Position numbers and translations under genes: made by a program. Positions 8,236 through 52,712 of a DNA stretch of 64,000 nucleotides are shown here, piece by piece; the first letter of the stretch is position 1; the number at the start of each line of letters is the position of its first letter. The notes beneath the pieces are model-generated. The model searched no databases, was not told the origin of the DNA, and saw only the letters and a list, made by a program, of their open reading frames with translations. Source of the stretch: Zootoca vivipara (taxonomy: Eukaryota); assembly GCF_963506605.1 (NCBI RefSeq), contig NC_083287.1, positions 57,722,001 through 57,786,000 on the forward strand. Direction: 5' to 3'.

Positions 8236-8365
8236 NNNNNNNNNNNNNNNNNNNNNNNNNNNNNNNNNNNNNNNNNNNNNNNNNNNNNNNNNNNNNNNNN
8301 NNNNNNNNNNNNNNNNNNNNNNNNNNNNNNNNNNNNNNNNNNNNNNNNNNNNNNNNNNNNNNNNN
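8236..8365. other. Assembly gap (130 N)
   Basis: Run of N. Confidence 1.
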
Positions 8366-8856
8366 AGCATCCTCTGTAGAAAAATGCCACTTTGAACCTT
8401 TGCAGCTTTGCCTTCTGGGTCCCCTGGAAATATCCCCCCCTCCTTCTGCGCCCTCTCCAGACACCCAGATGACGACCACTTAGATGGGTCGTGCGCAGCA
8501 TTAATGGTGGCTGGAAAGCAGAGGTTTGCGCAGAGCAAGACCTCTCTGCCCCTCAAGGCAACGTGGATCGACTCCCCTGGGGTGGTTCTGGCCCGCCAGT
8601 GAGAGCCAAGAGCTGCCTCTCGACGGAAGACGCTTGATGCAAAACTCTAGTGCTTGGATGATGCACCTTATTCCCCCAACTGCTTGATCCTCTTTCTTGG
8701 TTGAATAAAATTAAGTTTGCCTTTCCTTCGGCTCCTTGCTGTGGTGATTTCTCTTAAATGAGCAGAAGGATCCCCGACTCTTCACCGGCTGGGGGTTGGT
8801 TGTCGTCTTTCCCAACTGAGGCCACATCCATGCCATAATATTGGTAGTAGGAATAT

Positions 8857-8932
8857 TTGAATTATGGTGCTGCAGGAGACTCCTGGGAGTCCCATGGACT
8901 GCAAGAAGATCAAACCTATCCATTCTGAAGGA

Positions 8933-8981
<49 letters not shown>

Positions 8982-9798
8982 TTTATTTATACCCCGCCCT
9001 CCCCAGTCAGAACCGGGCTCAGGGCGGCTCACACCAATAAAATTACAATGAAACATAAAAAGCAATTGATTAAAATACAGATTAAAATACAGTATTAAAA
9101 TTTAAGTTTAAAATGCAGCCTGATTTTAAGTAGTACATAAATCCAAGCCATGAGGGAGGAAAACACAGGGGTCAGACTAAGTCCAACCCAAAGGCCAGGC
9201 AGCTCTGTCTTGCAGGCCCTGAGGAAAGATGACAAATGCTGCAGGGCCCTGGTCTCCTGTGAAAGAGCGTTCCACCAGGTTGGGGCCAGTACTGAAAAGG
9301 CCCTGGCCCTAGTAGAGGCCAATCTAGCCACCCCATGGCTCGGGATCTCCAGAATATTGTTTGTGGACCTTAAGATCCACGCGGGGCATACCAGGAGAGG
9401 CGGTCCCGTAGGTACGGGGGTCCCAAGCCGCATAGGGCTTTAAAAGTCAAAACCAGCACCTTAAACCTGATCCTGTACTCCACCAGGAGCCAGTGCAGCT
9501 AGTAAAGCACTGGATGAGTGCTCAGCCCTGAGTGCTCATTGGAAGGACAGATTGTGAAGCTGAGGCTCCAATACTTTGGCCACCTCATGAGAAGAGAAGA
9601 CTCCCTGGAAAAGACCCTGATGTTGGGAAAGATGGAGGGCATTAGGAGAAGGGGATGACAGAGGACGAGATGGTTGGACAGTGTTCTCGAAGCTACCAAC
9701 ATGAGTCTGACCAAACTGCGGGAGGCAGTGCAAGACAGGAGTGTCTGGCGTGCTATGGTCCATGGGGTCACGAAGAGTCGGACACAACTAAACAACAA
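8857..9798 (+). mobile_element. BovB (RTE) LINE 3' fragment split by a minus-strand L2 insertion (~8936-9520)
   Basis: BovB sequence stops at ...AAGGAAAT (~8935) and resumes at TCAGCCCTGAGTGCTCA (~9522). The intervening DNA is L2-like with an (AAT)n tail. Confidence 0.8.
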
Positions 9799-10686: not shown

Positions 10687-11869
10687 CCTAGAGTGGTTTT
10701 AACAAATCCCTCTTCCCAGGGGACTACGGGAATTCCAGCCCAGGAAACCTGTGTGAGTTTGTCCAACAATATGCTGCGACAAGGCTCTATTCACACCATA
10801 GACTTAAAGTGCTATGATACCACTTTAATTGTCACGGCTTTCTCCAAACAATTCTGGGAGCTGTAGTTTGTTAAGGGTGCTGCGAAGCCCTGGAGCCCCT
10901 CGCAGAGCTATAGCTCTCAGAGTTCCCTGGGAAAGGCGACTTGCTGTTCAACCTCTCCGGGAATTGTAGCTCTGCGAAGGGGTCTGGTCAACTTGGCAAC
11001 TTTTTTCGGGAAGCCAGGATTGGGGACTGTAGCATGTTAAGGGTGCCGAGAGGAGTTAGGAGGCCCATGTTCCCCTCACAGAGGTACAATTTGCAGGAGG
11101 TCTCAGCAGTCAGTCCCTGTGAGGGGAACGGGGTCGTGGGTCTCCTCTAACAACACCCTGATCCTACACCCCACTGGTATCCGAATCTTAAGCTCATATT
11201 TCTGTGGATCAAAACGGTTTTACAGTATTGGTGTAAGTGACATGGCTGCTGGATAGACCATTGCCAGAATATGTCCTGCATGGCCTCCTTAGTAGTGGTA
11301 CTTGGAGACCCTGAGAAAGAAAACTCTGCTTGGGTGTCTCCTTTTAGCAAACGCAGGAGGAGGATGTGTCAAATGTTGCCAGAGGAAGAGAAACTTAAAC
11401 ACGTAGCAGAGTTCCCAAAAATAGAGATCAGAGGCAATATTTCATCCAGAAGAGCTTTACTGTTCCTGAAGGCAAATGAGCAGAATGGTCACAAATCCAA
11501 TACATTCAGGATTGGCAAAGTCCATAAAAACCCAGTTGCAGCAGACTTAGCTTAAATGAAGAACTTACAAGAACTTATAACAAGGATAAACCCTTAACAC
11601 TATATACAGAACAGAACAAAGCGATAGAAAGAGAAAGTGGGAAGAGAAACCCAGGCTCTTCCTGGCCTGAATATTGCAGTCAGCATGACCTTGCAGAAGA
11701 GATAACAGAAGCAGAGGAAGCCAGCTGCTTCTCAGAAGGTCACAAACTCTCTGGCAGGCTCTTTTCACGCACAGAAAAGTTCTGTATCATTTTGTAAGTT
11801 TTTACTCCGCAGATTGACAGGATGGTGGTAACAGAGAGAAGGTAAATAAAGGGAAGATAAGGCAAGCAG

Positions 11870-12630
11870 GAGGCAGTGAGAGATTTTACTTTCTTGGGCT
11901 CCTTGATCACTGCAGATGGTGACAGCAGTCACAAAATTAAAAGATGCCTGCTTCTTGGGAGAAAAGCAATGACAAACCTAGACAGCATCTTAAAAAGCAG
12001 AAACATCACCTTGCCAACAAAGGTCCGTATAGTTAAAGCTATGGTTTTCCCAGTAGTGATGTATGGAAGTGAGAGCTGGACCATAAAGAAGGCTGATTGT
12101 CGAATAATTGATGCTTTTGAATTATGGTGCTGGAGGAGACTCTTGAGCAGGCATCCCCAAACTGCGGCCCTCCAGATGTTTTGGCCTACAACTCCCATGA
12201 TCCTTAGCTAACAGGACCAGTGGTCAGGGAAGATGGGAATTGTAGTCCAAAACATCTGGAGGGCCGAAGTTTGGGGGTGCCTGCTCTTGAGAGTCCCATG
12301 GACTGCAAAAAGATCAAAGCTATCCATTCTGAAGGAAATCAGCCCTGAGTGCTCACTGGAAGGACAGATCGTGAAGCTGAGGCTCCAATACTTTGGCCAC
12401 CTCATGAGAAGAGAAGACTCCCTGGAAAAGACCCAAAAGATGTTGGGAAAGATTGAGGGAACCAGGAGAAGGGGACGACAGAGGACGAGATGGTTGGACA
12501 GTGTTCTCGAAGCTACGAACATGAGTTTGACCAAACTGCGGGAGGCAGTGGAAGACAGGAGTGCCTGGCGTGCTCTGGTCCATGGGGTCACAAAGAGTCG
12601 GACACGACTAAACAACAACAACAACAACAA
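11870..12630 (+). mobile_element. BovB LINE 3' fragment with nested hAT MITE
   Basis: ORF pieces match the 23421-24659 RT C-terminus; (CAA)n tail. Confidence 0.9.
12148..12283 (+). mobile_element. 136-bp hAT MITE
   Basis: TIR CAGGCATCCCCAAACT...AGTTTGGGGGTGCCTG; perfect 8-bp TSD CTCTTGAG. Confidence 0.92.
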
Positions 12631-13903: not shown

Positions 13904-16900
13904 TCATGCGTTTGCCTCAGCAACTTTGTTTGATGTCATCCTAGGATGGCCTTGATTCTTCTCTGCCATCTTCTTCTCAATCATGGAGAGCAATTCCTCG
14001 GCTTGGGCTGCAAGCTCGTCTCCTGTTTCATTGTTGTTGAAACTGCAAAACCGTCCGTCACACTGATCCCTCAGTTCCTGAAAGTTTTTGTTGTCCGTGG
14101 AAGATATGTAATCTTCCAATCTTTCATTCCGCAACCTTTCTTTGTGGCTGAAGACAACCACCATGCATTGGTCGCTACTGTTGAATGTCTTCCTCACCCG
14201 CTGAACCACCTGGTGGTCTTCCTCTGTGAATCGGCCCACTGGGACGACCAGAACCAGAGCATGGGGACGGGGCTTGGAGAGACGTAGGCAGTGCTCAATC
14301 TCAGTAGAATTTTTGGGTCCATCAGAGTCAAAAATCGCAGGCGTGTCAATGACAACTACCCTCTTCCCGTTCCACTCTCTTATTCCTAACTGGCAAGACT
14401 TTGTAACTGGGGTCATTTCAAGCCTGGAGTCAAACCTCTTTCCCCCAAGGATGGTGTTCCCGGTCGCGCTTTTGCCAACCCCGGACTTTCCGACAATGAC
14501 GATGCAAAGCTCGGACTCCTCTTGCTCTGCTGAAACGGGATCAGCTGCATCTGTTAATGTCGTTGGAAAAAGAAGATCAGAACTGAGGAGTCCTAAAGCT
14601 TCTCATGGGGATCAGCACTTAAACTTTGCACTGGTTAGAGCCCTTGTAAGGCTCACTTTTGCAACCTGAATTTCCTGAACTGCCCAAGCAGTTAACTACA
14701 GAATGGGATGCAGAAAGCTCAGTCTATCTCTTTATTACAGCACGACACAGTTGCTAGTAATTCAAATGTTAAAGTTCTCTCTTTTGTTCTGTATGGTACT
14801 ATTTTATACCGTATATTTGGGCAAAGATTCTGTTTTTTTTTAAATTCATTTTTATTGATTTTTCTGTATATACATCAGCAAAAATGAGAAAGGCACACAG
14901 ATTCTGTTTGAGTATTGGTCATGGACCGTAATAAAGAGACTGACTGATTGACTGAATGCAGGAAGCGGATTTTGAACCGTGCAATTCATTCTTGCTGTTT
15001 TGAATTTCATTGTGTTATTCTCTTCCTTAGTAGGTGGTGCAAACAACTATTCTGAATTATGTTTTTTGTGGGTTGGGGAAGGAGGCATGGGGAATGAGTT
15101 TACAGAACCAAGAGAGCAGTGGCCCAAACCCAGGAATTTAAACTGTGCCTGGAAACAAACCTGATGCTGGTGTGAGTTGCTCTCTTTAATGTCTAATGTT
15201 CTACAGTTGTTTATGTGCTATAAGCCGGCGAGAGTGGCTGGGGAAACCATAACGAAATACTACTACTACTACTACTAGGGACGTGGGTGGCACTGTGGGT
15301 TAAATCACAGAGCCTAGGGCTTGCTGATCAGAAGGTCGGCGGTTCAAATCCCCGCGACGGGGTGAGCTCCCGTTGCTTGGTCCCAGCTCCTGCCAACCTA
15401 GCAGTTCGAAAGCACGTCAAAAATGCAAGTAGATAAATAGGAACCGCTACAGTGGGAAGGTAAACGGCGTTTCCATGTGCTGCTCTGGTTTGCCAGAAGC
15501 GGCTTTGTCATGCTGGCCACATGACCTGGAAGCTGTACACCGGCTCCCTTGGCCAGTAAAGCGAGATGAGCGCCGCAACCCCAGAGTCGTCTGCGACTGG
15601 ACCTAATGGTCAGGGGTCCCTTTAACTTTACTACTACGGTACTACTAATTTCAAAACACTGCTCAATGTCATTCCTTGCAGTTCCCTCCAGGGCTGCTAG
15701 ATGTCACTCTGAGACAGAACATGATTATCACAGACTTTTCCCTTCCACCCCCTTGCAGTCCTGTTTTCAAGGGTTCAAAAGTGTTTTGCACATCGAGTGT
15801 GCGCTTATATATTGCCAAAAAGGAGAGAAACGAGGAAGTGGGCTGGCATAAGAGGTAGATTTGGAGAGCATCTATTGTATGGGAAGTAAATTTGCTATTT
15901 AAAAAAACAAAAAAACCCCAAAACTTTACACCCATACAGCAGGGCTGAACGCAGCTGAACCCGGAAAGAAACTTTGCCATGAGTGCTTACTTTGAACAGG
16001 GGGGCTCTCTCCTCCCCCCACTCCGGACCCCTCAGTTCCTGGAATCTCCACGGCCTCCTGCGGCCTCTCTTCCTCTGGCGGGCGCACAGAAAGGTCCTTT
16101 TCGTTTAGGATCAAGGTAGGACTTCCAACCATTTCAGGCCTGCAGAAGGGCTTCTCCTTGTTCTGCTCCACCATGTCCTTCACCAAGGAGAGCAGTTTCT
16201 CAGCCTGCATCTCCCTCTCGTTTTGGTTGTCGTTGTCGACCGAGCACCACTGGAAATTGCGTTGGTATTCTGGGCGGGAAAGATGTTCCTCCCAAGCTGC
16301 GCTGTCCAGTTTCCCCCCAGTGAGCACGACAATTGTGTACTTCATGGCTTCGCAGCCAAATATCTCCTGAACCCACTCTATTGCCTTATCGTCCGCATTG
16401 TCACAGTGGTGCGTGACCAGCAACAAAGCGTGCGGTCCTGGTCTGGATAGACGGAGGCAGTGCTGGGAGTCAGGGGAATCTTTGGCTTTGCCGCTCCCAA
16501 GGTCAAAATTAGCAGGTGTGTCAATGAGGACTAGCCGCCTTCCCTCCCAGTCCCCGATTCCTAACTGGCAGGATCTCGTCACGGTGCCAACCTCAAATGT
16601 CTCCTCTCCAAGAATCGTGTTTCCCGTTGCACTTTTTCCTGCTCCTGGTTTCCCCACGAGGACAATCCGCACTTCTTCGCTGTCTGTCGGAATCTGGTTC
16701 TCAGGCTTTGATGCTGTTGAGGAAAGTTCAGATATTAGAGGGTGCAACGAAGGTTGTGTAGGAAACCAGTGCATTCATTGATATTGGGGGTTTGCACGGG
16801 GTGCTTTGCCTGTAGTTTTGAAGGAGGGGTCCTAGGCTGGGGACCCCCTAAGTTATATCTTGTAAGCAGAGACGGAAGGAGTTCACCTGTTTTGCAATAA

Positions 16901-19168: not shown

Positions 19169-19995
19169 AAGAGCAGCCTAGTTCCCTTCCTGTCATTGCA
19201 CTGCACTGCCCACATCTGCAGGCAGCTGTCTCTCTACGCCCAAACAGGCTGCTGTAATCCAGGCACCCAGTTGAAGGCCCTTCCGGATTCTCTGTTGTTC
19301 TGAAAACCAAGAACAGCCCAGGAGAAGCCGGAAGCCAGCCCTGTTCTCCCCAGCAGTTTGGATGTCCGTTGGACCCAAAAGTGCAGGCTTCACTGGCTAG
19401 GGGATTTATTTATTTTTTAAAGTAATTGCTTTGGTGCATCCCAGGTCCCTCTGCATCTGAGCTGAAAGCAGCAACCTCCGGAGAATAAGACCCACGGGCA
19501 GCACTGCAGGGCTGTTGTGTTGCAGTTGGGCAAGGAAGGGGGTGGAAGATCCTCTCTCAGGCACCCCCCCTTTCATCACTCATGCAAAATCATCCTGCAA
19601 GTCTGCTACCTGCTTCCCACCTCTAGAGGTGCAAACCTTTCCAGAAATCACGTTCAGTCTATTCATTATGCGTAGGGAACATTCAGTATTTTGGGCAGTG
19701 TGATTCGAAGATTCGAAGGATTTGTGCATCCCCGTTTCTGAGAGGGAAGAGACTCCAGGAATGCCCAGGAATGAAGGTCAATATTAAATATTCAACAGGG
19801 GGTTTCCACTCCTTCTTGAAATTAGCCTCTTTTGATCTCTAATTTTCATAGTTACATTTGCCTATTCGGCATATTCCGTCAGTTGTAACTGCCAATCTTC
19901 TTTGGTAGTAGTTCAAAGGATACAATGGTTTCAAAACGTCTCTTCTGTAATTGGATTTATTTATAAAGGTTTATACGTCAGATGAAGTATATATA

Positions 19996-20038
19996 CCAGG
20001 ACAGGGCCCTGTTTCGAATAGTCTTCTTCATCAGCTGG
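19996..20038 (-). ncRNA. Minimal type-I hammerhead ribozyme (Penelope-associated)
   Basis: Minus strand reads CCAG-CUGAUGA-A-GAA(GACUA)UUC-GAAA-CAGGGCCCUG-UC-CUGG. It has the complete core, stem I CCAG/CUGG, a palindromic stem III and a GUC cleavage triplet. Confidence 0.8.
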
Positions 20039-20061
20039 AATAAGTCAAATATACATTCATT

Positions 20062-20539
20062 GTTGTTGTTGTTGTTTAGTCGTTTAGTCGTGTCCGACTC
20101 TTCGTGACCCCATGGACCATAGCACGCCAGGCACTCCTGTCTTGCACTGCCTCCCGTAGTTTGGTCAAACTCATGTTCGTAGCTTCGAGAACACTGTCCA
20201 ACCATCTCGTCCTCTGTCGTCCCCTTCTCCTAGTGCCCTCAATCTTTCCCAACATCAGAGTCTTTTCCAAGGATTCTTCTCTTCTCATGAGGTGGCCAAA
20301 GTATTGGAGCCTCAGCTTCACAATCTGTCCTTCCAGTGAGCACTCAGGGCTGATTTCCTTCAGAATGGATAGGTTTGATCTTCTAGCAGTCCATGGGACT
20401 CTCAAGAGTCTCCTCCAGCACCATAATTCAAAAGCATCAATTCTTCGGCGATCAGGCTTCTTTATGGTCCAGCTCTCACTTCCATACATCACTACTGGGA
20501 AAACCATAGCTTTAACTATACGGACCTTTGTCGGCAAGG
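20062..20539 (-). mobile_element. BovB LINE short 3' fragment
   Basis: About 98% identical to 23403-23884; (CAA)n tail. Confidence 0.93.
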
Positions 20540-21427
20540 AGGAGGAGGAGGAGGCATCACCTGGTGGAGCGTCAGATCCTCAGGTGGAACAGGAAGTCAC
20601 AGGTGGATTTCCTCTTTGCCCTGTGGGATTCCCAGCATGGGAGGGAGTCCTGGAGGGAGGACAAATAACCCTACAGGTAGTAACCAGGCCAGAAGGAAGG
20701 CTCTGCTGGGCCCTCCACACTCGGAGGCAGCAAACCCTTCTGGGTACCAGTTTCTGGAAGCCACAGGTGGGGAGAGATGCTCTGGTGCTCACATCCTGTT
20801 TACAGGTTTCCCAGAATGGGCATCTGGTCTGCCACTGTGAGAAGAGGATGCTGGACTAGTTGGGCCCATTGATCCAAGAGGTTCTTCATAGAATCGTAGA
20901 GTTGGAAGGGACCCTCCAGGGTCATCTAGTCCAACCCGCTGCAAGGCAGGAATATGCAGCTGCCCCATTAGGGGACTGGACCTGCAACCTTGGCCTTATC
21001 AGCACCGCCGCGCTCCAACCAACAGAGCTATCAGGGTCAAGTCTCATGTTCTTTATGTGCTGGAGGGTAAGATCCTGGGACGGCACTGTTTCTCTGGCTG
21101 GGAGTGAGCCTCACTGCAGGGGCACAGGCAATGGGTGCCAGGGAAGACCCTGCCAGCTCCCTCCTGACCTAGGGTGACTTTAGGAGCAGGGCTGTGGCTG
21201 AGTGAAGGAGCATCGGCAGATCTCAGCTTCGATCCTGGGTAGGCCCCTTGAAGTCTAATCGTGGTCAGAGGTACAAAAGGAGGCTACCCAGGAAGCAAGG
21301 CCAAGCTGTGGATCTTTATCGGTCTGCTGCAACAAAAGAAGTCGTTTTATTTCTGCAGTGCAGGGGATGGTCTAGATGACCATAGGGGTCCCTTCCAACT
21401 GCAATTCTGTTTAGGGAAGCTTTTAAT

Positions 21428-21563
21428 CAGGCATCCCCAAACTGCGGCCCTCCAGATGTTTTGGCCTACATCTCCCATGATCCCTAGCTAAGAGGACCAG
21501 TGGTCAGGGATGATGGGAATTGTAGTCCAAAACATCTGGAGGGCCGAAGTTTGGGGGTGCCTG
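21428..21563 (+). mobile_element. 136-bp hAT MITE
   Basis: Same TIRs as 12148; TSD CTTTTAAT. Confidence 0.92.
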
Positions 21564-21672
21564 CTTTTAATATTTAATAGATTACATTACATTTTAATGT
21601 TCTGTTCTGTTGGAAGCTGCCCAGAGTGGCTGGGGAAACTGTCAGATGGGCAGGGTATATATAATAATAAAA

Positions 21673-21725
<53 letters not shown>

Positions 21726-23402
21726 TATGATCCTCTCCAGAATCTTCCATTCAGCTCCACTGGATGTCATTCTCATTCTAGTGCAATGAGAAAGGCATAG
21801 CTGCCAAGTTTTCCCTTTTCTCATGAGGAAGCCTATTCAGCATAAGGGGATTTCCCTTAAAAAAAGGGAGAGAAACATTTTCTCGCTTTCTCCACTGGGT
21901 GCCTCATTTTTAAAACTCCCCAAATGTTCCAGCCTTTCTTCATTGGGGAGTTGCGCCTTAATCCTTTGGCTTGCCCTTTCCTGCACATTTTTAATCTCCG
22001 CCTTTTATTTTCGCCTGCAAAAGTGTTTCCAGCCCAGATCTCCAGTTGCAACAAGGCCGGGCAGGCTCAGGCAATGCTTCCTTTGCCTTCCTCTTTCCCA
22101 CGGCTGGGGCGTTCGGGAACCGTATCCCAAAACTGCTGAAGGGCAACAGGTTGGCAAACGCTGCCTCCCTGAGAATCCCAATTAGTGGGGGATTAAGAAA
22201 ACCTTGTGAAATATCGGCAGCCGGTCTCTTGGGAACTCACACCAGCGCAGCGTTGGCTGCCAACCTAAGCAGTGCGGAAAAGGGCTTGGACCAATGCATG
22301 AAGCCCAGTGAGGCTGGTGCATAGATAAACTGTGGAACTCCCTCCCACAGGATTAGGCAGATTCATGGAGGAGGAGAGGGCTGTCGATGGCTACTAGCTA
22401 CGATGGCTCTCTATCCTGCTTCCATGGTCGAAGGCAGCAATGCTTCTGAATCTCAGTTGCTGGAAACCACAGGAAGGGGAGAGTGTTGCTCTTGCGCTCG
22501 AATTCTGTTCGCGGGTTGGCCACTGTGAGAACAGGATGGTGGAGCTTGATCCTGCAGGCTCTCCTTACACACCAATCTCTGAACGGTGCAAGATTCCAAG
22601 GGGTTCCCAGCGCTCCGCCGGGGGTTTTGTTTCCTTTTGGGAATGAGAGAAAGGGGAGACTGTGGTGTTTCCAAGATCTATATACACACACAAGCTGAGC
22701 CTACGATGAAGGGGTTCACAGCATTAACACCCAAGAAGGCCTTGCTTCTCCCATGGCCAAAGCCTTGGAGCCCAGCAGAAATCAGGCATGGCTTTTTCTC
22801 TGCCTTTCCGGCCTGCAGCTTTTGCCTCCAGCTTCTAGCTCACAGTTCAACTCTCAACTCTTCCCCTTTGTCTTTCTAACTAACCAGGAAGGGAGCCCAT
22901 CTGTTTGTCCTCTGGCACAGAGCTACATCTTTTGTTTCCTGAAGGGCTCCTACTTAGCAGGCCATCAGCAGGCTGGCCTGGCTATCTCAGCAATTGGATC
23001 CATGCTGGTTGCAGGAATTAGAAGGGGAAGCATTTGGGCATTCGTATGTTGTCTGTTGTCAATGGAGTGCGCCTTCAGGGGTGAAGTCAGATTGCTGCAT
23101 TAGCAGCCTGGAGGTGACCTCTCAGGGGCGCAAGCCTGGGCAGTGTGCCTGGAGGTCCTGGGCTGCCCAGACAACAAGACCCCCTTCTCAGCCTCGCTGA
23201 TGGGGTCCAAAGGAAAACAGAGCAAGATGTTTGGCCCCAGGAGGCGTACAAGGCACCATCCAACCGTCTTAGGGACTCCACTCTGGAATTGTGTAGGGTT
23301 TATTCCTGAGCCCTTTCTTCTTCCAGAGATGTTTCCATCTGATAGCCATGTTCAAATGTATAGCCATGTTCAAATATATGATAGCCATGTTCAAATATAT
23401 GA

Positions 23403-25545
23403 TGTTGTTGTTGTTGTTGTTTAGTCGTTTAGTCGTGTCCGACTCTTCGTGACCCCATGGACCATAGCACGCCAGGCACTCCTGTCTCGCACTGCCTCCC
23501 GCAGTTTGGTCAAACTCATGTTCGTAGCTTCGAGAACACTGTCCAACCATCTTGTCCTCTGTCGTCCCCTTCTCCTAGTGCCCTCAATCTTTCCCAACAT
23601 CAGGGTCTTTTCCAAGGATTCTTCTCTTCTCATGAGGTGGCCAAAGTATTGGAGCCTCAGCTTCACGATCTGTCCTTCCAGGGAGCACTCAGGGCTGATT
23701 TCCTTAAGAATGGATAGGTTTGATCTTCTTGCAGTCCATGGGACTCTCAAGAGTCTCCTCCAGCACCATAATTCAAAAGCATCAATTCTTCGGCGATCAG
23801 CCTTCTTTATGGTCCAACTCTCACTTCCATACATCACTACTGGGAAAACCATAGCTTTAACTATACGGACCTTTGTCGGCAAGGTGATGTCTCTGCTTTT
23901 GAAGATGCTGTCTAGGTTTGTCATTGCTTTTCTCCCAAGAAGCAGGCGTCTTTTAATTTCGTGACTGCTGTCACCATCTGCAGTGATCAAGGAGCCCAAG
24001 AAAGTAAAATCTCTCACTGCCTCCATTTCTTCCCCTTCTATTTGCCAGGAGGTGATGGGACCAGTGGCCATGATCTTGGTTTTTTTGATGTTGAGCTTCA
24101 GACCATATTTTGCGCTCTCCTCTTTCACCCTCATTAAAAGGTTCTTTAATTCCTCCTCACTTTCTGCCATCAAGGTTGTGTCATCTGCATATCTGAGGTT
24201 GTTGATATTTCTTCCGGCAATCTTAATTCCTGCTTGGGATTCATCTAGTCCAGCCTTTCGCATGATGAATTCTGCATATAAGTTAAATAAGCAGGGAGAC
24301 AATATACAACCTTGTCGTACTCCTTTCCCAATTTTGAACCACTCAGTTGTTCCATATCCAGTTCTAACTGTAGCTTCTTGTCCCACATAGAGATTTCTCA
24401 GGAGACAGATGAGGTGATCAGGCACTCCCATTTCTTTAAGAACTTGCCATAGTTTGCTGTGGTCGACACAGTCAAAGGCTTTTGCATAGTCAATGAAGCA
24501 GAAGTAGACGTTTTTCTGGAACTCTCTAGCTTTCTCCATAATCCAGCGCATGTTTGCTATTTGGTCTCTGGTTCCTCTGCCCTTTCGAAATCCAGCTTGC
24601 ACTTCTGGGAGTTCTCGGTCCACATACTGCCTAAGCCTGCCTTGTAGAATTTTAAGCATAACCTTGCTAGCGTGTGAAATGAGCGCAATTGTGCGGTAGT
24701 TGGAGCATTCTTTGGCACTGCCCTTCTTTGGAATTGGGATCTAGACTGATCTTCTCCAATCCTCTGGCCATTGCTGAGTTTTCCAAACTTGCTGGCATAT
24801 TGGGTGTAGCACCTTAACAGCATCATCTTTTAAAATTTTAAATAGTTCAGCTGGAATATCATCACTTCCACTGGCTTTGTTATTAGCAGTGCTTTCTAAG
24901 GCCCATTTGACTTCACTCTCCAAGATGTCTGGCTCAAGGTCAGCAACCACACTACCTGGGGTGTACGAGACCTCCATATCTTTCTGGTATAATTCCTCTG
25001 TGTATTCTTGCCACCTCTTCTTGATGTCTTCTGCTTCTGTTAGGTCCTTACCACTTTTGTCCTTGATTATGGTAATTTTTGTACGAAATGTTCCTTTCAT
25101 ATCTCCAATTTTCTTGAACAGATCTCTGGTTTTCCCCATTCTATTGTTTTCCTCTATTTCTTTGCATTGCTCATTTAAGAAGACCCTCTTATCTCTCCTT
25201 GCTGTTTATTGGAAATCTGCATTCAGTTTCCTGTATCTTTCCCTATCTCCCTTGCATTTTGCTTGCCTCCTCTCCTCCGCTATTTGTAAGGCCTCGTTGG
25301 ACAGCCATTTTGCCTTCTTGCATTTCCTTTTCCTTGGCATGGTTTTCGTTGCTGCCTCCTGTATAATGTTACGAGCCTCCATCCATAGTTCTTCAGGCAC
25401 TCTGTCCACCAAATCTAAATCCTTAAACCTGTTCCTCACTTCCACTGTGTATTCATAAGGGATTTGATTCAGATTGTATCTTACTGGCCCAGTGGTTTTT
25501 CCTACTTTCTTCAGTTTAAGCTGGAATTTTGCTATAAGAAGCTTG
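23403..25545 (-). mobile_element. BovB (RTE-clade) LINE, 5'-truncated, with RT domain
   Basis: ORF 23421-24659 has QAGFRKGRGTRDQI, FIDYAKAFD, GVRQGCILSP and LRYADD; upstream ORF pieces are interrupted; (CAA)n tail. Confidence 0.96.
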
Positions 25546-25618
25546 CTATAAGAAGCTTTGCTATAAGATTTTGCTATAAGAATGTTTTTGCTATACATTC
25601 ATTAGAGACCCTCTAAGC

Positions 25619-25752
25619 CAGGCATCCCCAAACTGCTGCCCTCCAGATTTCTGGCCTACAACTCCCATGATCCCTAGCTAACAGGACCAGTGGTCAGGGA
25701 TGATGGGAATTGTAGTCCAACAATCTGGAGGGCTGAAGTTTGGGGATGCCTG
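25619..25752 (+). mobile_element. 136-bp-family hAT MITE
   Basis: Same TIRs; TSD CTCTAAGC/CTCTAAGA. Confidence 0.9.
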
Positions 25753-25907
25753 CTCTAAGAACATTGAATTATAATACAAGCATATCTATATCACAATATT
25801 AAAAAATCTTTAACATATCTGGGCAAATATAACAATGAAAAGATATTCTTACCAAGTTGTACATGTAGTTCAAATTAGATAACCAAAGTGTGTTTGTAAT
25901 ATATATA

Positions 25908-26253
25908 GGGACCCAGGTGGTGCTGTGGGTTAAACCACAGAGCCTAGGGCTTGCTGATCAGAAGGTCGGCGGTTCGAATCCCTGCGACGGGGTGAGCTCC
26001 TGTTGTTCGGTCCCAGCTCCTGCCAACCTAGCAGTTCGAAAGCACCTCAAAGTGCAAGTTCTGGCGGGAAGGTAAACAGCGTTTCCGTGTGCTGCTCTGG
26101 TTCACCAGAAGCGGCTTTGTCATGCTGGCCACATGACCTGGAAGCTGTACGCCGCTCCCTCGGCCAATAACGCGAGATGAGCGCCGGCTGCAACCCCAGA
26201 GTCAGTCACGACTGGACCTAATGGTCAGGGGTCCCTTTACATTTACCTTTACC
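25908..26253 (+). mobile_element. Sauria SINE
   Basis: Homologous to 15278-15630; TSD TAATATATATA. Confidence 0.92.
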
Positions 26254-26710
26254 TAATATATATAGGAAGGAAACTATGTGTGTTCTAATACAAACTCAAA
26301 AGTTTAAAGGTTTAAAGAGGCAGTGGTACTAAATCTCTCTTAAAGATACAGTAAGGAATAAGGCAGATTACAGAAAGGAAGTAAAGTCTTGATGGTTGTT
26401 TAGAACTAAGGGAGAGATAGTGCTAAACAGGTGAATGAACTTAGTCTCTCGTTGTAACAAAAGTTTATCTACTGTATATTCTGGCGATGGAAACGATCTA
26501 GGGGTACGTAGCTTCCAAATAACAAAAAACAAAAAGTCATCTTCTGTGTGTTTGCATTGCATGTAGCGTTCTACCAGCGGTGCTTCCACGATTTCGTTGC
26601 GTATTCTGGATTGGTGTTCATTGATCCTAAATTTTACTTGCCTGGAGCATTTACCAATATACATCATTCTTCTCCTGTGGCTTTTATCTTGAATTTTGAA
26701 TCCTGCCTGC

Positions 26711-26883
26711 CAGGGCTGTCTCAAGCAGGTCGGGCGCCCTGGCGCTGAGGCGCGGAGATCGCTCCGGCGCCCCCGCCCTTGCAGCATGCAGTACGGCTTC
26801 CGCGTGGCTTTGTCGCGCAGCGCCCCCCCAGCCCAGCGCCCTGGCGCCCCGCACCACTGGGGCTACACCTAGAGCCGGCCCTG
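26711..26883 (-). mobile_element. GC-rich hAT MITE
   Basis: TIR CAGGGCTGTC...GCCGGCCCTG; TSD CTGCCTGC; ends match 31853-32226 in inverted orientation. Confidence 0.85.
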
Positions 26884-33239: not shown

Positions 33240-35888
33240 ATGGCCAAAGGTGAGTCTTTTCCTGATAGTGACCATCATGAGGTAGTAAAACAAAGGCTGC
33301 ATGGTTTGCTTAAGACTTCAAGATGGCAGAGGCAGGAGAAGGATGAACCCAGGGGAAACGCAGAATGGGAACCTCCAATATTTCTCCAATGAAAATAGGG
33401 ACATCCTATTCAACAACAACAACAACAACAATTTTATTATTTATACCCCACCCATCAGAATGGGTTGCCCCAGCTACTCTGGGCGGCTTCCAACATATAT
33501 AAAAAACATAATAAAACATTTAAAAACTTTCCTATACTGGGCTGCCTTCAGATGTCTTCTAAAGGTTGTATAGTAACTTATCTCCTTGGCTCGGGGGTCA
33601 CATAACTCCAGACCCTCCTACGTTTCTTTGATGATAATAGGGACGTCCTAAGGCAAAGCGGGACATTTTGGGATCACATCAGAAACTGGAGGGTCTGTGG
33701 GAAGGGGACAATCCCAGAGAGGGGTCTCCAGTAGTGGGGAGAGAGTCAGGGAATAGTAATGAGGAGAGGAAGAGGCAAGCACCCCTTGAACTCTTATCCA
33801 TGCACTCCCCATAGCAGGATTGTCCCCTTTCCCCACCGCTCATGCCAGCTTCTTCTGGGCAGAAGGATGTGCATCATAGCTGCCAAGTTTTCCCTTTTCT
33901 CGCGAGGAAGCCTATTCAGCATAAGGGAAAATCCCTTAAAATAAGGGATAACTTGGCAGCTATGATGTGCATGGAAGGGAGACCGTCTCTGTGCACTCAG
34001 AGGAGGAACAGGGGCAAATCTTGGAGATGCCACTCGCACCCCCTTGATCAAGAAGGAGTGAGAAACGCAGACAGCAGAGGGGGCGACACCTAGGAAGGAG
34101 CAGTGAGCGCCCGAGAAAATGCTCCTTGTCTATATGCATTGCCTGAAATGCCAAAGCTTTCTCTCAATAAAAGTTAATGGGAAACTTCCAGCAAGTCTTG
34201 GCTCAATTCCAGGAGGGCAGGACATGCACGGCCACCACAAATCTCTGGAGTGCTACTTATGGCTTCAAGGTGGCCACAAACATGTCTTCTTCTTGGATCA
34301 TGCTGAGGGTAAAAACTGTGGCCAGGGTGCCCCCTGGAAGGATCCATCCAGACACATTTTCTCGACACTGGCAAGAGAAATAGGGGTAGGAAATTCCCCT
34401 TGTACCGTGGAACCTCGGTTTTTTAACGAAATGAGTTTCGGAAGACCGTTTCAGTCCCAAAACATTTGAAAACTGAAAACTCAATACAGAAGCCTCAATA
34501 CAATAGCGAAACTCAAAACAGAAGCCTTGCAGCATGCTCAACTTCCGAAAAGTGTTTGAAAACCGAAGCATTTATTTCCGGGTTTACGGCGTCCGAGTTC
34601 TGAAACGTTTGTCAACAGAGATGTTCGAAAACAGAGGTTCCATTGTAGCTTTAATAGAATCACAGCGTTGCAGAGTTGGAAGGGACCCCAAGGGTCATCT
34701 AATAATAATAATAATTTAATATTAATTTATTACTTCTACCCCACCCATTTGCCCGGGGGGGGGGCAGCCACTCTGGGTGGCTTCCAACGGAATATTAAAA
34801 ACATTATAAAATATCAAACATTAAAAACTTCCCTAAACAGGGCTGCCTTCAGATGTCTTCTAAAAGTCAGGTTGTTGTTTATTAATCTAGTCTGATCCCC
34901 TGCAATACAGGAATCACAACTACAACACCCGTGGCACATAGTGTATTTTAATGTTTTAATGTTCCTGCTGGAAGCCGCCCAGAGTGGTTGGGGAAACCCA
35001 GCCAGATGGGTGGGGTATAAATAATAAATTGAAACTTCCTGTTCCATTTCCCTGTTGAGCAGCTCTTGGCATCAGAAAGTTCTTCTTAGTCAGAATCGCC
35101 TTTCTTGTTAAAAAAAAAAAGTAGGTAACTAATAAGTAGCACACCTATGAAACATTTGTAAGCCTTTTTTTTTTTTTGCTAGTCTCAGGAACTTTGCTGA
35201 CATGGCATTTTTTATCTCTTGTTTAGCCAGACCAGATGAAGAATTGAGAATTCTGCTCATTGGAAAAACAGGATCTGGGAAGAGCACAACAGGAAACACC
35301 ATCCTGGGGACTAAAGAATTTACAAGCACATGTAATCCTGGTTCAACAACCCAGGACTCCAAAAGAAAAGATGCCACTGTAGGTGGCAGGAGAATTGCTG
35401 TTGTTGACACACCTGGGTTCTTTGATACAAAAAGTAATAAATGCTTCACACCAGAAGAGCTGAAGAAGTGCGTTAATATGGTCTATCCTGGATTTCACGC
35501 CATCGTCGTTGTGGTAAAAACGGGCAAGATCACAACGGAGGACCAGGAAACATTTCGGAAAGTGAAAAGCTTCTTCAAGGATGAAGGAAAGAAGTATTTG
35601 ATTCTTTTATTCACCTTTAAAGATCAGTTAGATATGGAGGGTTCAACTATAGAGAAGTTCTTAACAGGTGTTGACGGGCACCTGAAGGATCTGATTCAGA
35701 TGTCCAAAGGACGATTCATTGCTTTTAACAATGTGGCTGGTGGAAAAGAAAAGCAGAGTCAGGTGGAGAAGCTCATTGAGATGATTGATGAGATGGTGGC
35801 AATCAATGGCAGTACAAATCTGTACACTGTGGAAAAATCCGAAAAGGACAACTCTTGGGGGAGTTGGCTTAAGTCTTTCCTTTTTTAA
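33240..35888 (+). CDS. GIMAP: GIMAP-family GTPase, single AIG1 domain; join(33240..33249,35227..35888), 223 aa
   Basis: Motifs GKTGSGKSTTGNTILG, DTPG, YPGFHA, TFKDQL, FNN. Mini-exon ATGGCCAAAG|GTGAG (phase 1) fits acceptor TTTAG|CC; total 672 nt. Confidence 0.9.
33875..33964. mobile_element. 90-bp hAT MITE
   Basis: TIR CATAGCTGCCAAGTT; TSD ATGTGCAT. Confidence 0.9.
34405..34645. mobile_element. Tigger/pogo-like MITE
   Basis: TA|CCGTGGAACCTCGGTT...GAGGTTCCATTG|TA. Confidence 0.75.
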
Positions 35889-37520: not shown

Positions 37521-40500
37521 TGTTATGTACTGAGCTGAATCCTAGAACAATAGGATTCAGAATCAGCGGGAGCTACCCAATCCAACTCCAGGTGGAAGTG
37601 AATCCGCAACCTGATTGGCCTGCTGGAGCAGCCAATCAGGCGGCTGGCAGAAGTGAATCTGCTACCTGATTGGCCTGTAGGAGCAGCCAATCAGGCTGCA
37701 GGCAGAAGTCAATCCACAATATAATTGGCCCACAGGTGTAGCCCTGAAGTAGCCAATCACGCAAGGCCCATTGTGTAAATAATGTATATAAGCAGATGGT
37801 TTTGGGAAAAGAGCCATTCGTCTTCTCTTCTCCTCCTTGATGACTATGAGCTGAATTAAGAGCATGAAATTCACTCTTGACTCCGAGTATATTTCACTGG
37901 CGACGAAGGTGGGATCCTGCTGAGCTGACCGCCACCACGCACTGCACCGCAGCACCGCCACCTGCTGCACCGCTGCATCGCACCGTGCATCCAGGCTTCA
38001 GCTCCAGGACCCAAGGAACCCAGAATGGCAACTGACAGCAGCTTCTCGCCATTCAAACCAGCATCAGGAGACTGGGAAGGGTACGCCACCCGTTTCAACT
38101 TCCTCCTGCAAGCGAAAGAAGTCACCAACGATGCCATGAAGAGGGCAACATTCTTCAGCGTCTGTGGAGAGGAGACGTTTGAAATCGCCCGGGCTCTCCT
38201 TGCACCTAGAGATGTCGCTACCGTCTCTTACAAAACAATAATGGAACGGCTGAAGGAGCACTTCTCACCACAGCCCTCGGTGGTAGCTTGCCGAAATGCC
38301 TTCTACGCAAAGCGGCAAGCCCCGGGGGAAACCATAACTGGGTTTGTGACCTCCCTCCGCCAAGCCGCCCGGTTATGCAACTTCTCAGAATTGGAGAACA
38401 TGCTTCGTGACCACCTCGTCGGTGGCCTGAGGGACGAGATGTTGCAACGGCGCCTCTACGCCAAAAAAGACCTCACGTTCCAGATTGCTCTGGAGGAAGC
38501 CCTGGCAACCGAAGCCGCCGAGAGGTCAACGCAAGAGGCACGACCGGCCCCGCCATCCCAACCGAGGGTCTACCACGAAGACCTCACCGACGAATCCGAA
38601 TCTGACAGGGAGGAAGTACACCGAGTACAGCGGCGCACTCAAGCAGCACACACACCACAGCAGCCTCGACGAGAAGGAGGGAACTGTGCAAGCTGCGGGG
38701 AGAACCACGAGAGGAGGACCTGTCGTTTCCGCAACGCAGAGTGCAGGCAGTGCAGAAAATTGGGACACATCGCCCGGGTGTGTCGGGCTCGACTCACCCG
38801 TCGACAAGCATCAGATGACCGACCCAGGAGCCCCAGGTCACACGGCACCATGCACCAAGGCAACTCGACGGAGATCACGGACTACCAGGTATTCCAGTTG
38901 CCCCATCCCAGCACAGAGAAAATTTATATAGAGGTACAGATAGAGGGAGCCCCATGCCGCATGGAGCTGGACACGGGTTCAACTCTATCCATAATCTCGG
39001 CCCGAACATTAAGGGAACTGTGCCCTAATGGGGGCCCCAAACTAAGGCCGGCCCCATTCACCCTCCGGGACTTCCAGAAACGTAAGGTCCCTACAATGGG
39101 GGTGGGGACCTTCAGGGTGCAATATCGAGGGCGAAAGCAACAATTGGACTTGCTGGTAGTTAAGGGCCCCTACGTTAGCTTACTGGGACTGGCATGGTTT
39201 GGACCTCTGGGGCTAGCCGTTACCGGGGTGAACCGCACTAGCTTACAAGTGGACGTGGACGCCATATGCAAAGAGTTTCCAGGGGTTTTCGATGGGGCAT
39301 TGGGACGATATACAGGACCCCCCATTGCCCTACAGCTAGACCCCGCTGTACGACCCATCAGGCACAAGGCCCGCCGGGTCCCGTTCGCCCTGAAACCCCG
39401 CATAGACGAGGAATTGGACCGGCTCGTGGAGCAAGGAGTGCTGGAGCCGGTGCCCAACGCCCCCTGGGAAACTCCAATTGTCACACCCGTCAAGCCTAAC
39501 GGTTCGGTCCGCATCTGTGCAGACTACAAATGCACCATAAACAAGGCTCTCACGGCCCATGCATACCCAGTGCCAGTGGTCAGCCATGTCCTCGCCACCC
39601 TGGCTGGGTCAAAAAATCTTTGGCAAACTGGACTTGGCCCAAGCGTATCAACAGTTGCCTGTGGACGAAGCCACAGCAGAGGCTCAGACGATTGTGACGC
39701 ACAGAGGGGCATTCAGAGTAAAGCGGCTGCAATTTGGCGTTAGCGTGGCACCAGGCATATTCCAGAATCTAATGGACTCTCTCCTTAAAGGGATTCCTGG
39801 CGTCACCCCCTTCTTCGATGATGTACTGATCGCCGGGCCCACACCAGAGGAATTTGAGGACCGCCTCCGCTCCGTCCTGCACCGTTTCCAGACGGCGGGC
39901 CTCAAGGTGAAGCGGGAAAAGTGTTTACTGGGAGTGCCGCAGGTGGACTTTCTGGGATTTAAGGTGGACGCAGAAGGGGTCCATCCAACCGGTGACAAGG
40001 TACGGGCCATTTGTGAGGCCCCAGCGCCCAAGAGCAAGCCCGAACTTCAGTCATTCTTGGGACTATTGAACTTTTACCATGCCTTCCTTCCCCATAAGGC
40101 AGCGGTAGCGGAGCCCCTACACAGACTCCTAGATAAAAGGGCCCCTTGGGTGTGGGGCCAGCGACAAAGGGCCGCATTCCAGGCAGTCAAGGACTTGCTC
40201 GTCTCGAACTCGGTCTTAGCACACTTCGACGAGAGGCTGCCAGTGGTGCTGGCATGCGACGCCTCTCCCTATGGCATCGGCGCTGTCCTGGGACACCAAC
40301 TCCCGGATGGAAGAGAGGTGCCGGTGGCATACTTCTCCCAGACGCTTGCTGCAGCCGAACGAAACTACTCACAGATTGACAAGGAGGGTCTGGCAATCGT
40401 GAAGGGCGTAAAAAAATTCCATGATTTCTTGTACGGGCGGCCCTTTACCATAGTGACTGACCACAAGCCGTTGCTTGGCCTGTTTGCCCCTGAGAAGCAG

Positions 40501-42482
40501 ACCCCCCAAGTGTTGTCTCCACGTGTCCTCAGGTGGTCAATTTTCCTTGCCGGCTACCAGTATGCACTAATCCACCGCCCTGGGAAGGCGATGGGCCACG
40601 CAGACGCCCTCAGCAGGCTACCACTACCAGAAACAGGCCCCGACCCAGCGCCTGCGCAAGAGGTTATGACCCTGGAGCTGCTTCCCGACCGACCCATTCA
40701 GGCACAAGAAGTTGCGCACCATTCCACAAAAGATAGGGTCATCTCCCGGGTCCTGGACTGGGTGTGGCGAGGATGGCCCAGCAGCAGCCCCGGGCCAGAA
40801 TTCGCTGGCTACACAAACCGCAAACATGAACTGTCGGCCCACAAGGGGTGCCTGTTATGGGGAAGCAGGGTTGTTGTTCCCCAGCCCCTCCGCAAAAGGG
40901 TCCTCACAGCCCTACACGAGACACACCCAGGGGTAGTGAGGATGAAGGCCCTTGCCAGGAGTTATGTGTGGTGGCCGGGGATTGACAGAGAGATAGAGGC
41001 CTGGGTCCAACACTGCCAGACCTGCCAAGAATCCCGCCCGGATCCCCCAAGGGCCCCAGTCCAGCCCTGGGAGTCCGCCCGACATCCATGGTCACGCTTG
41101 CACGTGGACTTCGCTGGCCCCTTCCAGGGAAAAACATTCTTCATAGTGGTGGATTCCTACACCAAATGGCTGGAGGTTGCACTGGTACCATCCACTGCTA
41201 CGGCGGCAGCCATCCGGGTACTCCGTAAGCTGTTTGCGACCCACGGGCTCCCTGACACCCTCGTCTCGGACAATGGAACCGCATTCACGTCAGAGGAGTT
41301 CCAGACCTTCACAGCGCAGAACGCCATCCGCCACATCCGCTCAGCACCATTCCACCCTGCCACCAATGGCCAAGCGGAGCGCATGGTGCGGACCACCAAG
41401 GACAGCCTCCGCCGCATGACACAAGGGGACTGGGAATACCGCCTTGCCGCATTTCTTCTAGCACAGCACAGCACCCCAAGCACAACGACGGGCCGGAGCC
41501 CAGCTGAATTACTAATGGGCCGGCGCCTTGCAACTAGACTGGACCGACTTCACCCCGACAGAGCTCAGGATGAGGTAGTGGTGGGGAAAGGCAGGAACCC
41601 CCGGACATTTGTGGCCCAGGACCCAGTGTATGCAAAGAATTTTGGGGCAGGCCCAGCATGGGTACCCGCCACAGTCACCAAGGTGACCGGTCCCGTGTCG
41701 TACGAGGTACTAACGGAAGGGGGGCAATGTTGGCGCCGCCACTGTGACCAGCTACGGCGACGATTCCCAGGAGGAACCCGGGAGGAGAGCGGGACAGAGG
41801 GGTCCCAAGGGGACAGCAGGGCAGTGAGGCCTGTAGAGCGAGAGGGGTGGGCAGGGGAAGCAGAAGCAGTAGGCACAGAGGGGCGCCCCGAGGCTGGAAG
41901 GACACCGGAACCAGAGCTACAACCTAGTGGTTCAGTGGCGCCAGACCAGACAGCCCTGGCACAGCCAGCAGCCTCGGAACACGAGCCAGAACCAGAACCC
42001 CTGACCAAGGAACACCCCAGGCCACAATGCACACGGAGGCGGCCAGCAGACCTTGGGGACTACGAATGCAACTTCCCGGGCAGGACTGGAACTTAGAGGG
42101 GAGGGGTGTTATGTACTGAGCTGAATCCTAGAACAATAGGATTCAGAATCAGCGGGAGCTACCCAATCCAACTCCAGGTGGAAGTGAATCCGCAACCTGA
42201 TTGGCCTGCTGGAGCAGCCAATCAGGCGGCTGGCAGAAGTGAATCTGCTACCTGATTGGCCTGTAGGAGCAGCCAATCAGGCTGCAGGCAGAAGTCAATC
42301 CACAATATAATTGGCCCACAGGTGTAGCCCTGAAGTAGCCAATCACACAAGGCCCATTGTGTAAATAATGTATATAAGCAGATGGTTTGGGGAAAAGAGC
42401 CATTCGTCTTCTCTTCTCCTCCTTGATGACTATGAGCTGAATAAAGAGCATGAAATTCACTCTTGACTCCGAGTATATTTCA
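37521..42482 (+). mobile_element. Ty3/Gypsy (Mag-like) LTR retrotransposon, full length
   Basis: 376-bp TG..CA LTRs (37521-37896 and 42107-42482, 3 differences). TSD TGCCC. PBS TGGCGACGAAGGTGGGAT (37898-37915) is complementary to the tRNA-Ser(GCU) 3' end. PPT at 42095-42106. Confidence 0.98.
38025..42096 (+). CDS. Gypsy gag-pol polyprotein (Zn knuckles, protease, RT, RNase H, integrase); one frameshift at 39611-39616
   Basis: CASCGENH..C and CRQCRKLGHIARVC knuckles, LDTGS protease, RT FFDD, RNase H CDASPYG..TDHKPL, integrase HETH..CQTC and D..SDNG..ER. Confidence 0.92.
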
Positions 42483-52612: not shown

Positions 52613-52712
52613 CATCCTACAACCGCATTCCTGCATTGCAGTGGGTTGGACTAGATGATCCTTGGCATCATCCTGGGAACTATTATACAATTCTAAGATT
52701 CTAACTCTAAGG

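What the first reader, a model, noticed from the sequence alone, without database searches (positions are those of the whole stretch)
20050..25603. 5.5-kb BovB-cargo-BovB composite bounded by one 12-bp TSD: LINE-mediated import of ~2.9 kb of other genomic DNA between two GIMAP promoters
Seen: TATACATTCATT lies at 20050-20061 (next to the tail of the short BovB) and at 25592-25603 (next to the 5' end of the long BovB). I see no TSD around either BovB on its own. Between them is 2.86 kb of non-BovB DNA (20540-23402). Removing 20062-25603 restores a continuous Penelope 3' region, which independently supports a single insertion. The shared ~460 bp of the two BovBs differ at about 10 positions. Inference: either a read-through transcript from a donor with two tandem BovBs was reverse-transcribed from the second 3' end (3' transduction, established for L1; I do not know how well documented it is for BovB), or a circle made by BovB-BovB recombination integrated here.
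Basis: partly seen in the sequence, partly recalled or inferred. Interest (0 to 1): 0.8.

Follow-up and report, generated by a model that had tools for sequence, protein, structure and literature searches.

The report
BovB LINE carrying 2.9 kb cargo
Two copies of a lizard jumping gene (BovB) and 2.9 kb of ordinary DNA between them sit inside one 12-base target duplication, so they most likely arrived as one retrotransposition that carried host DNA along; the source locus could not be found with the tools at hand.

Summary
TATACATTCATT occurs only twice in the window. One copy abuts the (CAA)n tail of a 478-bp BovB 3' fragment (20062-20539, minus strand). The other abuts the 5' end of a 5'-truncated 2.19-kb BovB (23403-25591, minus strand). 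Between them lie 2,863 bp of non-BovB DNA. Neither BovB has a duplication of its own.

Both outer junctions look like target-primed reverse transcription. The duplication starts with A after a T, which is the published BovB nick signature. The 5' junction shows TATA microhomology and a 48-nt stutter.

Best reading (about 0.57): a read-through RNA from a donor locus with two same-strand BovBs was reverse-transcribed from the downstream BovB 3' end. That is a 3' transduction by an RTE-clade LINE. Such a tandem BovB pair exists in this same window.

Not shown: the donor locus, an empty site, and read support for the junctions. The single read-laying run was swamped by repeats. It showed only that:
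- the cargo exists in the source species in two versions, about 2-3% apart;
- two related species hold cargo-like DNA about 6-13% different.

Rivals: an RT template jump, DNA-level recombination into a pre-existing simple BovB, and misassembly.

This is a neat single case of moderate interest.

The parts
20050..20061 (-). 3' copy of the target-site duplication (AATGAATGTATA in BovB sense), abutting the (CAA)n tail of the short BovB
20062..20539 (-). Short BovB: the last 478 bp of the element with a (CAA)5 tail at 20062-20076. It is 5'-truncated at an (AGG)6/(CCT)6 microsatellite (20537-20554). Proposed site where reverse transcription started.
20540..23402 (-). Cargo: 2,863 bp of non-BovB DNA. 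It is a mosaic of unique sequence and short repeats: a mir-5408-like MITE at 21428-21565, (TAT)19 at 21673-21728, and a 21-nt tandem repeat at 23340-23403. There is no Pfam hit in its ORFs and no second copy in the window.
23403..25543 (-). Long BovB: 5'-truncated, with its own (CAA)5 tail at 23403-23421 and the RT domain in ORF 23421-24659. The reading frame is kept over 727 codons apart from two in-frame stops. The endonuclease domain is missing.
   Evidence: consensus departs at 25543 (table 7, X19)
25544..25591 (-). 48-nt stutter: imperfect tandem copies of the long BovB's own terminal 12-14 nt (TTGCTATAAGAA on the + strand). The last copy runs into the TSD through TATA microhomology.
25592..25603 (-). 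5' copy of the target-site duplication. In BovB sense it starts with A and is preceded by T (T|A).
   Evidence: signature from PMC13295347
20000..20034 (-). Flank: Penelope-type minimal hammerhead motif (CUGAUGA...GAAAC, palindromic loop, GUC), 11 nt downstream of the TSD. It marks the host element that was interrupted.
   Evidence: only such motif in the window; no Rfam hit
26368..26787 (-). Flank: GIY-YIG-like ORF, taken as the C-terminal endonuclease of the interrupted Penelope-like element.
   Evidence: atlas score 0.95, GIY-YIG clusters; no Pfam hit

Best explanation
One BovB target-primed reverse transcription event inserted a 5.54-kb cDNA into the 3' region of a Penelope-like element.

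The template was a single read-through RNA from a donor locus. There, a BovB copy lay about 2.9 kb upstream of, and on the same strand as, an older 478-bp 5'-truncated BovB 3' end. BovB has no poly(A), and its RT recognises the element's own 3' end. Here the RT started at the downstream BovB tail. It copied that fragment, the 2.86 kb of intervening host DNA and the upstream BovB's tail, then 2.14 kb of its body. It then stopped and was joined to the target through TATA microhomology, with a 48-nt stutter.

Shown:
- the anatomy of the composite;
- a single TSD;
- the T|A nick signature;
- no individual TSDs;
- a donor-like tandem BovB architecture in the same window.

Inferred:
- the RNA intermediate;
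- the donor locus;
- where reverse transcription started.
For: - Exact 12-bp repeat at the two outer edges only; no repeat longer than 5 nt around either BovB alone.
- One edge is a BovB (CAA)n tail and the other a 5'-truncated BovB body, the polarity expected of TPRT.
- The TSD begins with A after a T, as reported for reptilian Bov-B (PMC13295347). The same holds for the two other BovB copies in the window, which have TSDs of about 8-13 bp.
- The cargo/short-BovB junction is a (CCT)n microsatellite, not a poly(A). The cargo is repeat-studded non-coding DNA, so it looks like contiguous genomic sequence rather than a processed mRNA.
- Two same-strand BovBs 2.07 kb apart exist at 8856-9796 and 11869-12630, so donor-type arrangements are common here.
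- Reads: run X15 of the source species holds cargo pieces identical to the window and also a second version about 2% different.
- Reads: run X19 shows only a version about 3% different.
- Reads: relatives B and C hold cargo-like DNA 6-13% different.
- Reads: position 25269 marks the long BovB as belonging to a subfamily dominant in species A but not in B or C. The composite should therefore postdate the split, and the cargo should have an older home elsewhere.
- Contig depths in X15 fit two loci better than two alleles: flank about 16, each cargo version about 14-17, shared stretches about 27-28. The tool warns that contig depth is unreliable.
Against: - No donor locus was seen.
- No empty site was seen.
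- No read or contig spanning either outer junction was listed. The output was swamped by BovB and MITE copies, with thousands of rows not shown.
- The second cargo version could be a divergent allele rather than a donor. X19's flank also differs, by 1.3%.
- The cargo carries 3 AATAAA and 5 ATTAAA hexamers in the transcribed sense, which a Pol II read-through RNA would have had to pass.
- The final structure is equally produced by DNA-level recombination into a pre-existing simple BovB insertion.
- The assembly has gaps (N run at 8236-8365), so its quality is not beyond doubt.
Confidence: 0.57

Rival explanations
1. One TPRT event but two RNAs. The RT copied an RNA consisting of the cargo plus the short BovB 3' end up to its 5' end. 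It then jumped end-to-end onto the 3' tail of a separate BovB RNA and copied 2.14 kb of it.
For: It gives the same single TSD and polarity. The long BovB's tail is joined directly to the first cargo base. The stutter at the 5' junction shows this RT or repair process slips and jumps. End-to-end template jumps are established for R2 and L1 reverse transcriptases (my knowledge).
Against: It needs an RNA whose 5' end happens to lie 2.86 kb upstream of a BovB fragment, plus a second RNA. Read-through needs only one RNA. Tandem BovBs are common here.
Confidence: 0.12
2. DNA-level event. A plain long BovB insertion with this TSD was already present. The short BovB plus cargo was later copied in from a tandem-BovB locus. 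Routes: ectopic gene conversion, unequal recombination, or integration of a BovB-BovB recombination circle.
For: It yields exactly the observed structure. The long BovB alone between the two TSD copies would be an ordinary insertion. The two BovB 3' ends are 97.9% identical over 478 bp, enough for homologous recombination.
Against: It needs two events, the second a rare 3.3-kb heterologous insertion. No intermediate was seen. Other BovB composites with cargo were noted elsewhere in this genome (untested), which fits an RT-based habit better.
Confidence: 0.1
3. Assembly artefact. The real locus has a simple BovB insertion, and the assembler threaded through a different tandem-BovB locus via the shared BovB sequence.
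For: BovB is extremely abundant (table 2). The window has an assembly gap. No junction-spanning read was retrieved.
Against: It requires two compensating switches inside BovB homology. Cargo pieces identical to the window exist in an independent run alongside a second version. That fits two real copies.
Confidence: 0.07
4. Two independent BovB insertions into native DNA. The 12-bp repeat is a coincidence.
For: BovB is dense in this region.
Against: An exact 12-mer at both outer boundaries has a chance of about 1e-6. Neither BovB has a TSD of its own. The T|A rule is met only by the composite's boundary.
Confidence: 0.02

Closest known systems
L1 3' transduction (read-through of the LINE's own 3' end, flanking DNA carried to a new site)
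   Same: LINE plus downstream flanking DNA inside one TSD. 5' truncation. Microhomology at the 5' junction. Kilobase-scale host DNA moved.
   Different: L1 transcripts end at a downstream poly(A) signal, and L1 RT primes on any poly(A). BovB has no poly(A) and a (CAA)n tail. Here the insertion ends in a second BovB 3' end, which presumably supplied the recognition site. I found no paper describing 3' transduction by BovB in three library searches. That is not proof that none exists.
SINE mobilisation by stringent-type LINEs through a shared 3' end (Sauria SINE/Bov-B; UnaL2/UnaSINE1)
   Same: Any RNA that ends in the LINE's 3' module is reverse-transcribed. The 478-bp BovB fragment plays the part of a SINE tail.
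   Different: The 'head' here is 5 kb of Pol II-type read-through RNA that includes another BovB. It is not a small-RNA-derived SINE head. This is a one-off copy, not a family.
Chimeric retrocopies made by RT template jumping (U6-L1 chimeras, R2 end-to-end jumps)
   Same: Several sequence modules inside one TSD.
   Different: Those junctions join RNA ends. Here the cargo looks like contiguous genomic DNA between two LINE copies.

Membership tests
BovB (RTE-clade LINE) | Reverse transcriptase ORF | tested here: met
   Pfam RVT_1, 3e-35, in ORF 23421-24659. The frame is kept over 727 codons, with two in-frame stops.
BovB (RTE-clade LINE) | 3' end with a (CAA)n microsatellite tail and no poly(A) | tested here: met
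   Both copies end in ...GACTAAACGACTAAA(CAA)5. (CAA)n is reported for reptilian Bov-B (PMC13295347).
BovB (RTE-clade LINE) | Tn-TA insertion signature: the TSD starts with A, is preceded by T, and has TTT about 10 nt upstream | tested here: inconclusive
   T|A is met at 25603/25604. Only TT is present, at -12/-13, not TTT. T|A is also met by the two other BovB copies in the window.
LINE 3' transduction | LINE plus non-LINE 3' flank enclosed by one TSD, with no TSD around the LINE alone | tested here: met
LINE 3' transduction | The transduced segment is contiguous with the source LINE at a donor locus | not testable with these tools
LINE 3' transduction | An empty pre-insertion site exists in other alleles or species | tested here: inconclusive
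   No joint 20061>25604 appeared among the rows shown. 3,514 joints were not shown because of repeat flooding.
Penelope-like element (the interrupted host element) | GIY-YIG endonuclease ORF and a hammerhead ribozyme in the terminal region, on the same strand | tested here: inconclusive
   The atlas places ORF 26368-26787 among GIY-YIG clusters (0.95), but Pfam gives no hit. The hammerhead core motif is present once, at 20000-20034, but Rfam gives no hit. No RT ORF was seen.

The most novel reading that the evidence does not exclude
BovB, a stringent-type LINE without poly(A), habitually starts reverse transcription at any downstream BovB 3' end in a read-through RNA. It thereby moves kilobases of host DNA, here into the intergenic space of a GIMAP immune-gene cluster. 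The insertion may still be polymorphic in the species: run X19 shows only the other cargo version. If general, this is an unrecognised route of DNA shuffling in squamates and ruminants. It also shows that the BovB RT can make a cDNA of at least 5.5 kb, longer than the ~3.5-kb element.
Probability: 0.3. Interest if true: 0.65.

Novelty: new variant of a known kind. Interest (0 to 1): 0.45.

Why it matters
3' transduction is a textbook property of L1, which primes on poly(A). RTE-clade and CR1-type LINEs recognise their own 3' end, and for that reason are thought to move little host DNA and to make few retrocopies.

A composite like this shows a way round that limit: a second LINE 3' end downstream acts as the start site. 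BovB is dense in squamate and ruminant genomes. Four or five fragments lie in this 64-kb window, two of them in tandem. Such events could therefore be frequent enough to shuffle regulatory DNA.

This is one case, and its donor is unproven.

Tried and rejected
- In-window search for a second cargo copy or a second Penelope copy to align across the insertion site: none found.
- Rfam scan for the hammerhead: no hit. Only mir-5408-like MITE hairpins appeared.
- Pfam scan of eight cargo ORFs: nothing, so no gene fragment identifies the donor.
- Read laying on the whole composite with two runs of the source species and two relatives. More than 130,000 contigs per run were laid because of BovB and MITEs. 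The junction, joint and loose-end tables were truncated, and no row concerned 20061/20062 or 25603/25604.
- I considered reading an ancestral/derived asymmetry from the variant table. I rejected it because the table keeps only the best-supported rows, which favours variants shared with the relatives.
- The search of earlier findings by sequence: blank.
- Three literature searches for BovB/Bov-B plus transduction found nothing relevant.
- A shared target motif as the explanation for TCAAATATA next to both tails: the other two BovB copies do not have it. It is left unexplained.
Full report
**What is there**

The 12-mer TATACATTCATT occurs exactly twice in the window, even with one mismatch allowed: at 20050-20061 and 25592-25603. 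BovB sense is the minus strand. Read in that sense, the stretch is:

- TSD (25603-25592);
- a 48-nt stutter (25591-25544);
- a 5'-truncated BovB (25543-23403) ending in (CAA)5;
- 2,863 bp of non-BovB DNA (23402-20540);
- a (CCT)6 microsatellite;
- the last 478 bp of a BovB (20539-20062) ending in (CAA)5;
- TSD (20061-20050).

The long copy has a Pfam RVT_1 domain (3e-35). Its reading frame runs for 727 codons with only two in-frame stops. It lacks the endonuclease domain. The two BovB 3' ends are 97.9% identical, with 10 mismatches in 478.

**Is the repeat a real target-site duplication?**

- **Position.** It sits exactly at the two outer boundaries. Random 40-bp pairs from this window share 12 or more bases about 0.1% of the time, nearly always through repeats and without any constraint on position.
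- **No rival repeats.** Neither BovB alone is flanked by a direct repeat longer than 5 nt.
- **Length.** The BovB at 11869-12630 (+) has its own 11-13-bp TSD. The one at 8856-9796 (+) has a degenerate TSD of 8-11 bp.
- **Nick signature.** A 2026 study of reptilian Bov-B reports that TSDs start with A, are preceded by T, and have a T-run about 10 nt upstream (the 'Tn-TA' signature; PMC13295347). In BovB sense the composite's 5' flank reads ...GGGTCTCT|AATGAATGTATA. T|A is met and the T-run is only TT. The two other BovBs in the window also start with A after T.
- **5' junction.** The family consensus departs from this copy at 25543 (loose end in run X19, table 7). What follows is four to five imperfect copies of the element's own terminal TTGCTATAAGAA. 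The last copy merges with the TSD through TATA. That is the kind of microhomology and slippage expected where a cDNA is joined to the target.

So one end carries the endonuclease and tail hallmark and the other carries the 5'-joining hallmark, for the composite as a whole.

**The flanks**

A Penelope-type minimal hammerhead motif (CUGAUGA...GAAAC, palindromic loop, GUC) lies at 20000-20034 on the minus strand.

A GIY-YIG-like ORF lies at 26368-26787, also on the minus strand (no Pfam hit).

After subtracting the composite, a MITE (25619-25756, TSD CTCTAAG) and a SINE (25906-26246), the ORF stop and the hammerhead are about 300 bp apart. It is not a direct test, because no second Penelope copy is in the window and Rfam does not detect the ribozyme.

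GIMAP (AIG1-type) exons lie at 15926-16774 (minus) and 35202-35888 (plus). The composite is therefore in the space between divergently oriented GIMAP genes.

**The cargo**

It is GC 51%, with CpG depleted like the flanks. It is studded with short repeats: a mir-5408-like MITE at 21428-21565, (TAT)19, SINE and MITE fragments, and a 21-nt tandem repeat next to the long BovB's tail. Its ORFs have no Pfam hit. It has no poly(A) at its junction with the short BovB. It looks like ordinary intergenic or intronic DNA, not a processed mRNA.

**Reads**

I laid two runs of the source species (X15, X19) and one run each of two relatives (X5 = species B, X6 = species C) on 19850-25800. More than 130,000 contigs per run matched because of BovB and the MITEs. 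Thousands of joint and loose-end rows were not shown, and none of the rows shown concerns the outer junctions. Neither the junctions nor an empty site were tested.

What can be reported:

- X15 has contigs identical to the window at 19850-20016, 20627-20793, 22076-22241 and 22730-23128.
- X15 also has a second version of the cargo. It shows 6 differences in 20929-21232, and both letters are present at 22000, 22016, 22050, 22242 and 22267.
- X19 shows only a different version: 36 differences in 1,197 bp, 3.0%. Its flank piece differs by 2 in 151.
- Species B and C hold cargo-like contigs 6-13% different.
- At 25269 nearly all BovB copies of species A carry the window's C. All those of B and C carry T. 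The long BovB therefore belongs to a subfamily that expanded in A after the split.

If the composite is one insertion carrying an A-specific BovB, the cargo-like DNA in B and C must sit at another, older locus. That is what a donor would be.

Contig depths in X15 fit two loci better than two alleles: flank about 16, version-specific contigs about 14-17, shared stretches about 27-28. The tool states that contig depth should not be relied on, so I count this only as a hint. The second version may be a divergent allele.

**Mechanism**

The simplest account is a 3' transduction adapted to a LINE that recognises its own 3' end. A transcript ran through a BovB, through 2.86 kb of flank and through a downstream same-strand BovB fragment. 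The RT started at the downstream (CAA)n tail on a T|A nick. It copied 5.5 kb and stopped inside the upstream BovB.

The donor-type arrangement is not exotic. In this window two BovBs lie on the same strand 2.07 kb apart, at 8856-9796 and 11869-12630.

The cDNA is longer than a full-length Bov-B, which is about 3.5 kb (PMC13295347).

Points against: the cargo carries eight poly(A)-signal hexamers in the transcribed sense, and the donor was not seen.

**Rivals**

- **End-to-end template jump between two RNAs.** This gives the same footprint. The donor's left junction decides between it and read-through.
- **DNA-level recombination or circle integration.** This would act on a pre-existing plain long-BovB insertion and gives the same final structure. 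An allele with the long BovB alone would support it.
- **Misassembly.** This would need two switches inside BovB homology. Long reads decide it.
- **Two independent insertions.** Effectively excluded by the TSD statistics.

**Known or new**

3' transduction is established for L1 and SVA. Mobilisation of any RNA ending in a stringent LINE's 3' module is established for SINE/LINE pairs (my knowledge). Three full-text searches for BovB or Bov-B with 'transduction' returned nothing on the subject. This shows only that it is not prominent in the open literature.

Two other first-stage notes in this genome describe BovB insertions with captured DNA inside one TSD. I did not test them.

I class this as a new variant of a known kind. 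It rests on one well-formed case whose donor, empty site and read support remain to be shown.

- Read laying and the look-up of sequencing runs were capped at one call each.
- No tool offered a search of the whole genome of this species.

Noticed in passing
window 20045-20053, 23370-23378, 23391-23399: The 9-mer TCAAATATA occurs only three times in the 64-kb window (both strands). Each occurrence lies about 4-30 nt from the start of a BovB (CAA)n tail: next to the short BovB, and in the tandem repeat next to the long BovB. The other two BovB copies lack it. It may be chance (about 0.5%), or a preference of the second nick.
   Followed up: partly
window 25544-25595: 48-nt stutter at the long BovB's 5' junction. 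It is made of four to five imperfect tandem copies of the element's terminal 12-14 nt, the last sharing TATA with the TSD. It suggests repeated slippage or template jumping during 5' joining.
   Followed up: partly
window 8856-9796 and 11869-12630 (+): Two BovB fragments lie on the same strand 2.07 kb apart, each with its own TSD starting with A after T. The first is interrupted by another repeat. The second is interrupted by a mir-5408-like MITE (12148-12287). This is the kind of tandem arrangement a read-through donor would need.
   Followed up: partly
window 25269: BovB copies of the source species mostly carry C here, while all copies in two related species carry T (table 3). This is a diagnostic site for a lineage-specific BovB subfamily.
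   Followed up: no
window 12148-12287, 21428-21565, 25619-25756, 52709-52850, 58217-58356: A 138-bp palindromic MITE family scores 35-49 bits against Rfam mir-5408, below the gathering score of 90. The copy at 25619-25756 has a 7-bp TSD, CTCTAAG, and lies 15 nt from the composite.
   Followed up: partly
window 23340-23403: A 21-nt tandem repeat (TGATAGCCATGTTCAAATATA, 3.2 copies) directly abuts the long BovB's tail. Its origin is unknown. If the read-through model is right, it would be the donor's 3' flank.
   Followed up: no
window 38025-42096 (+): Long gag-pol-like ORFs (572 and 845 aa with protease, RT and integrase-like motifs) suggest a fairly intact LTR retrotransposon between GIMAP genes.
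   Followed up: no
window 4398-5336 (+): A 312-aa ORF with several C2H2 zinc-finger motifs in a very GC-rich stretch.
   Followed up: no
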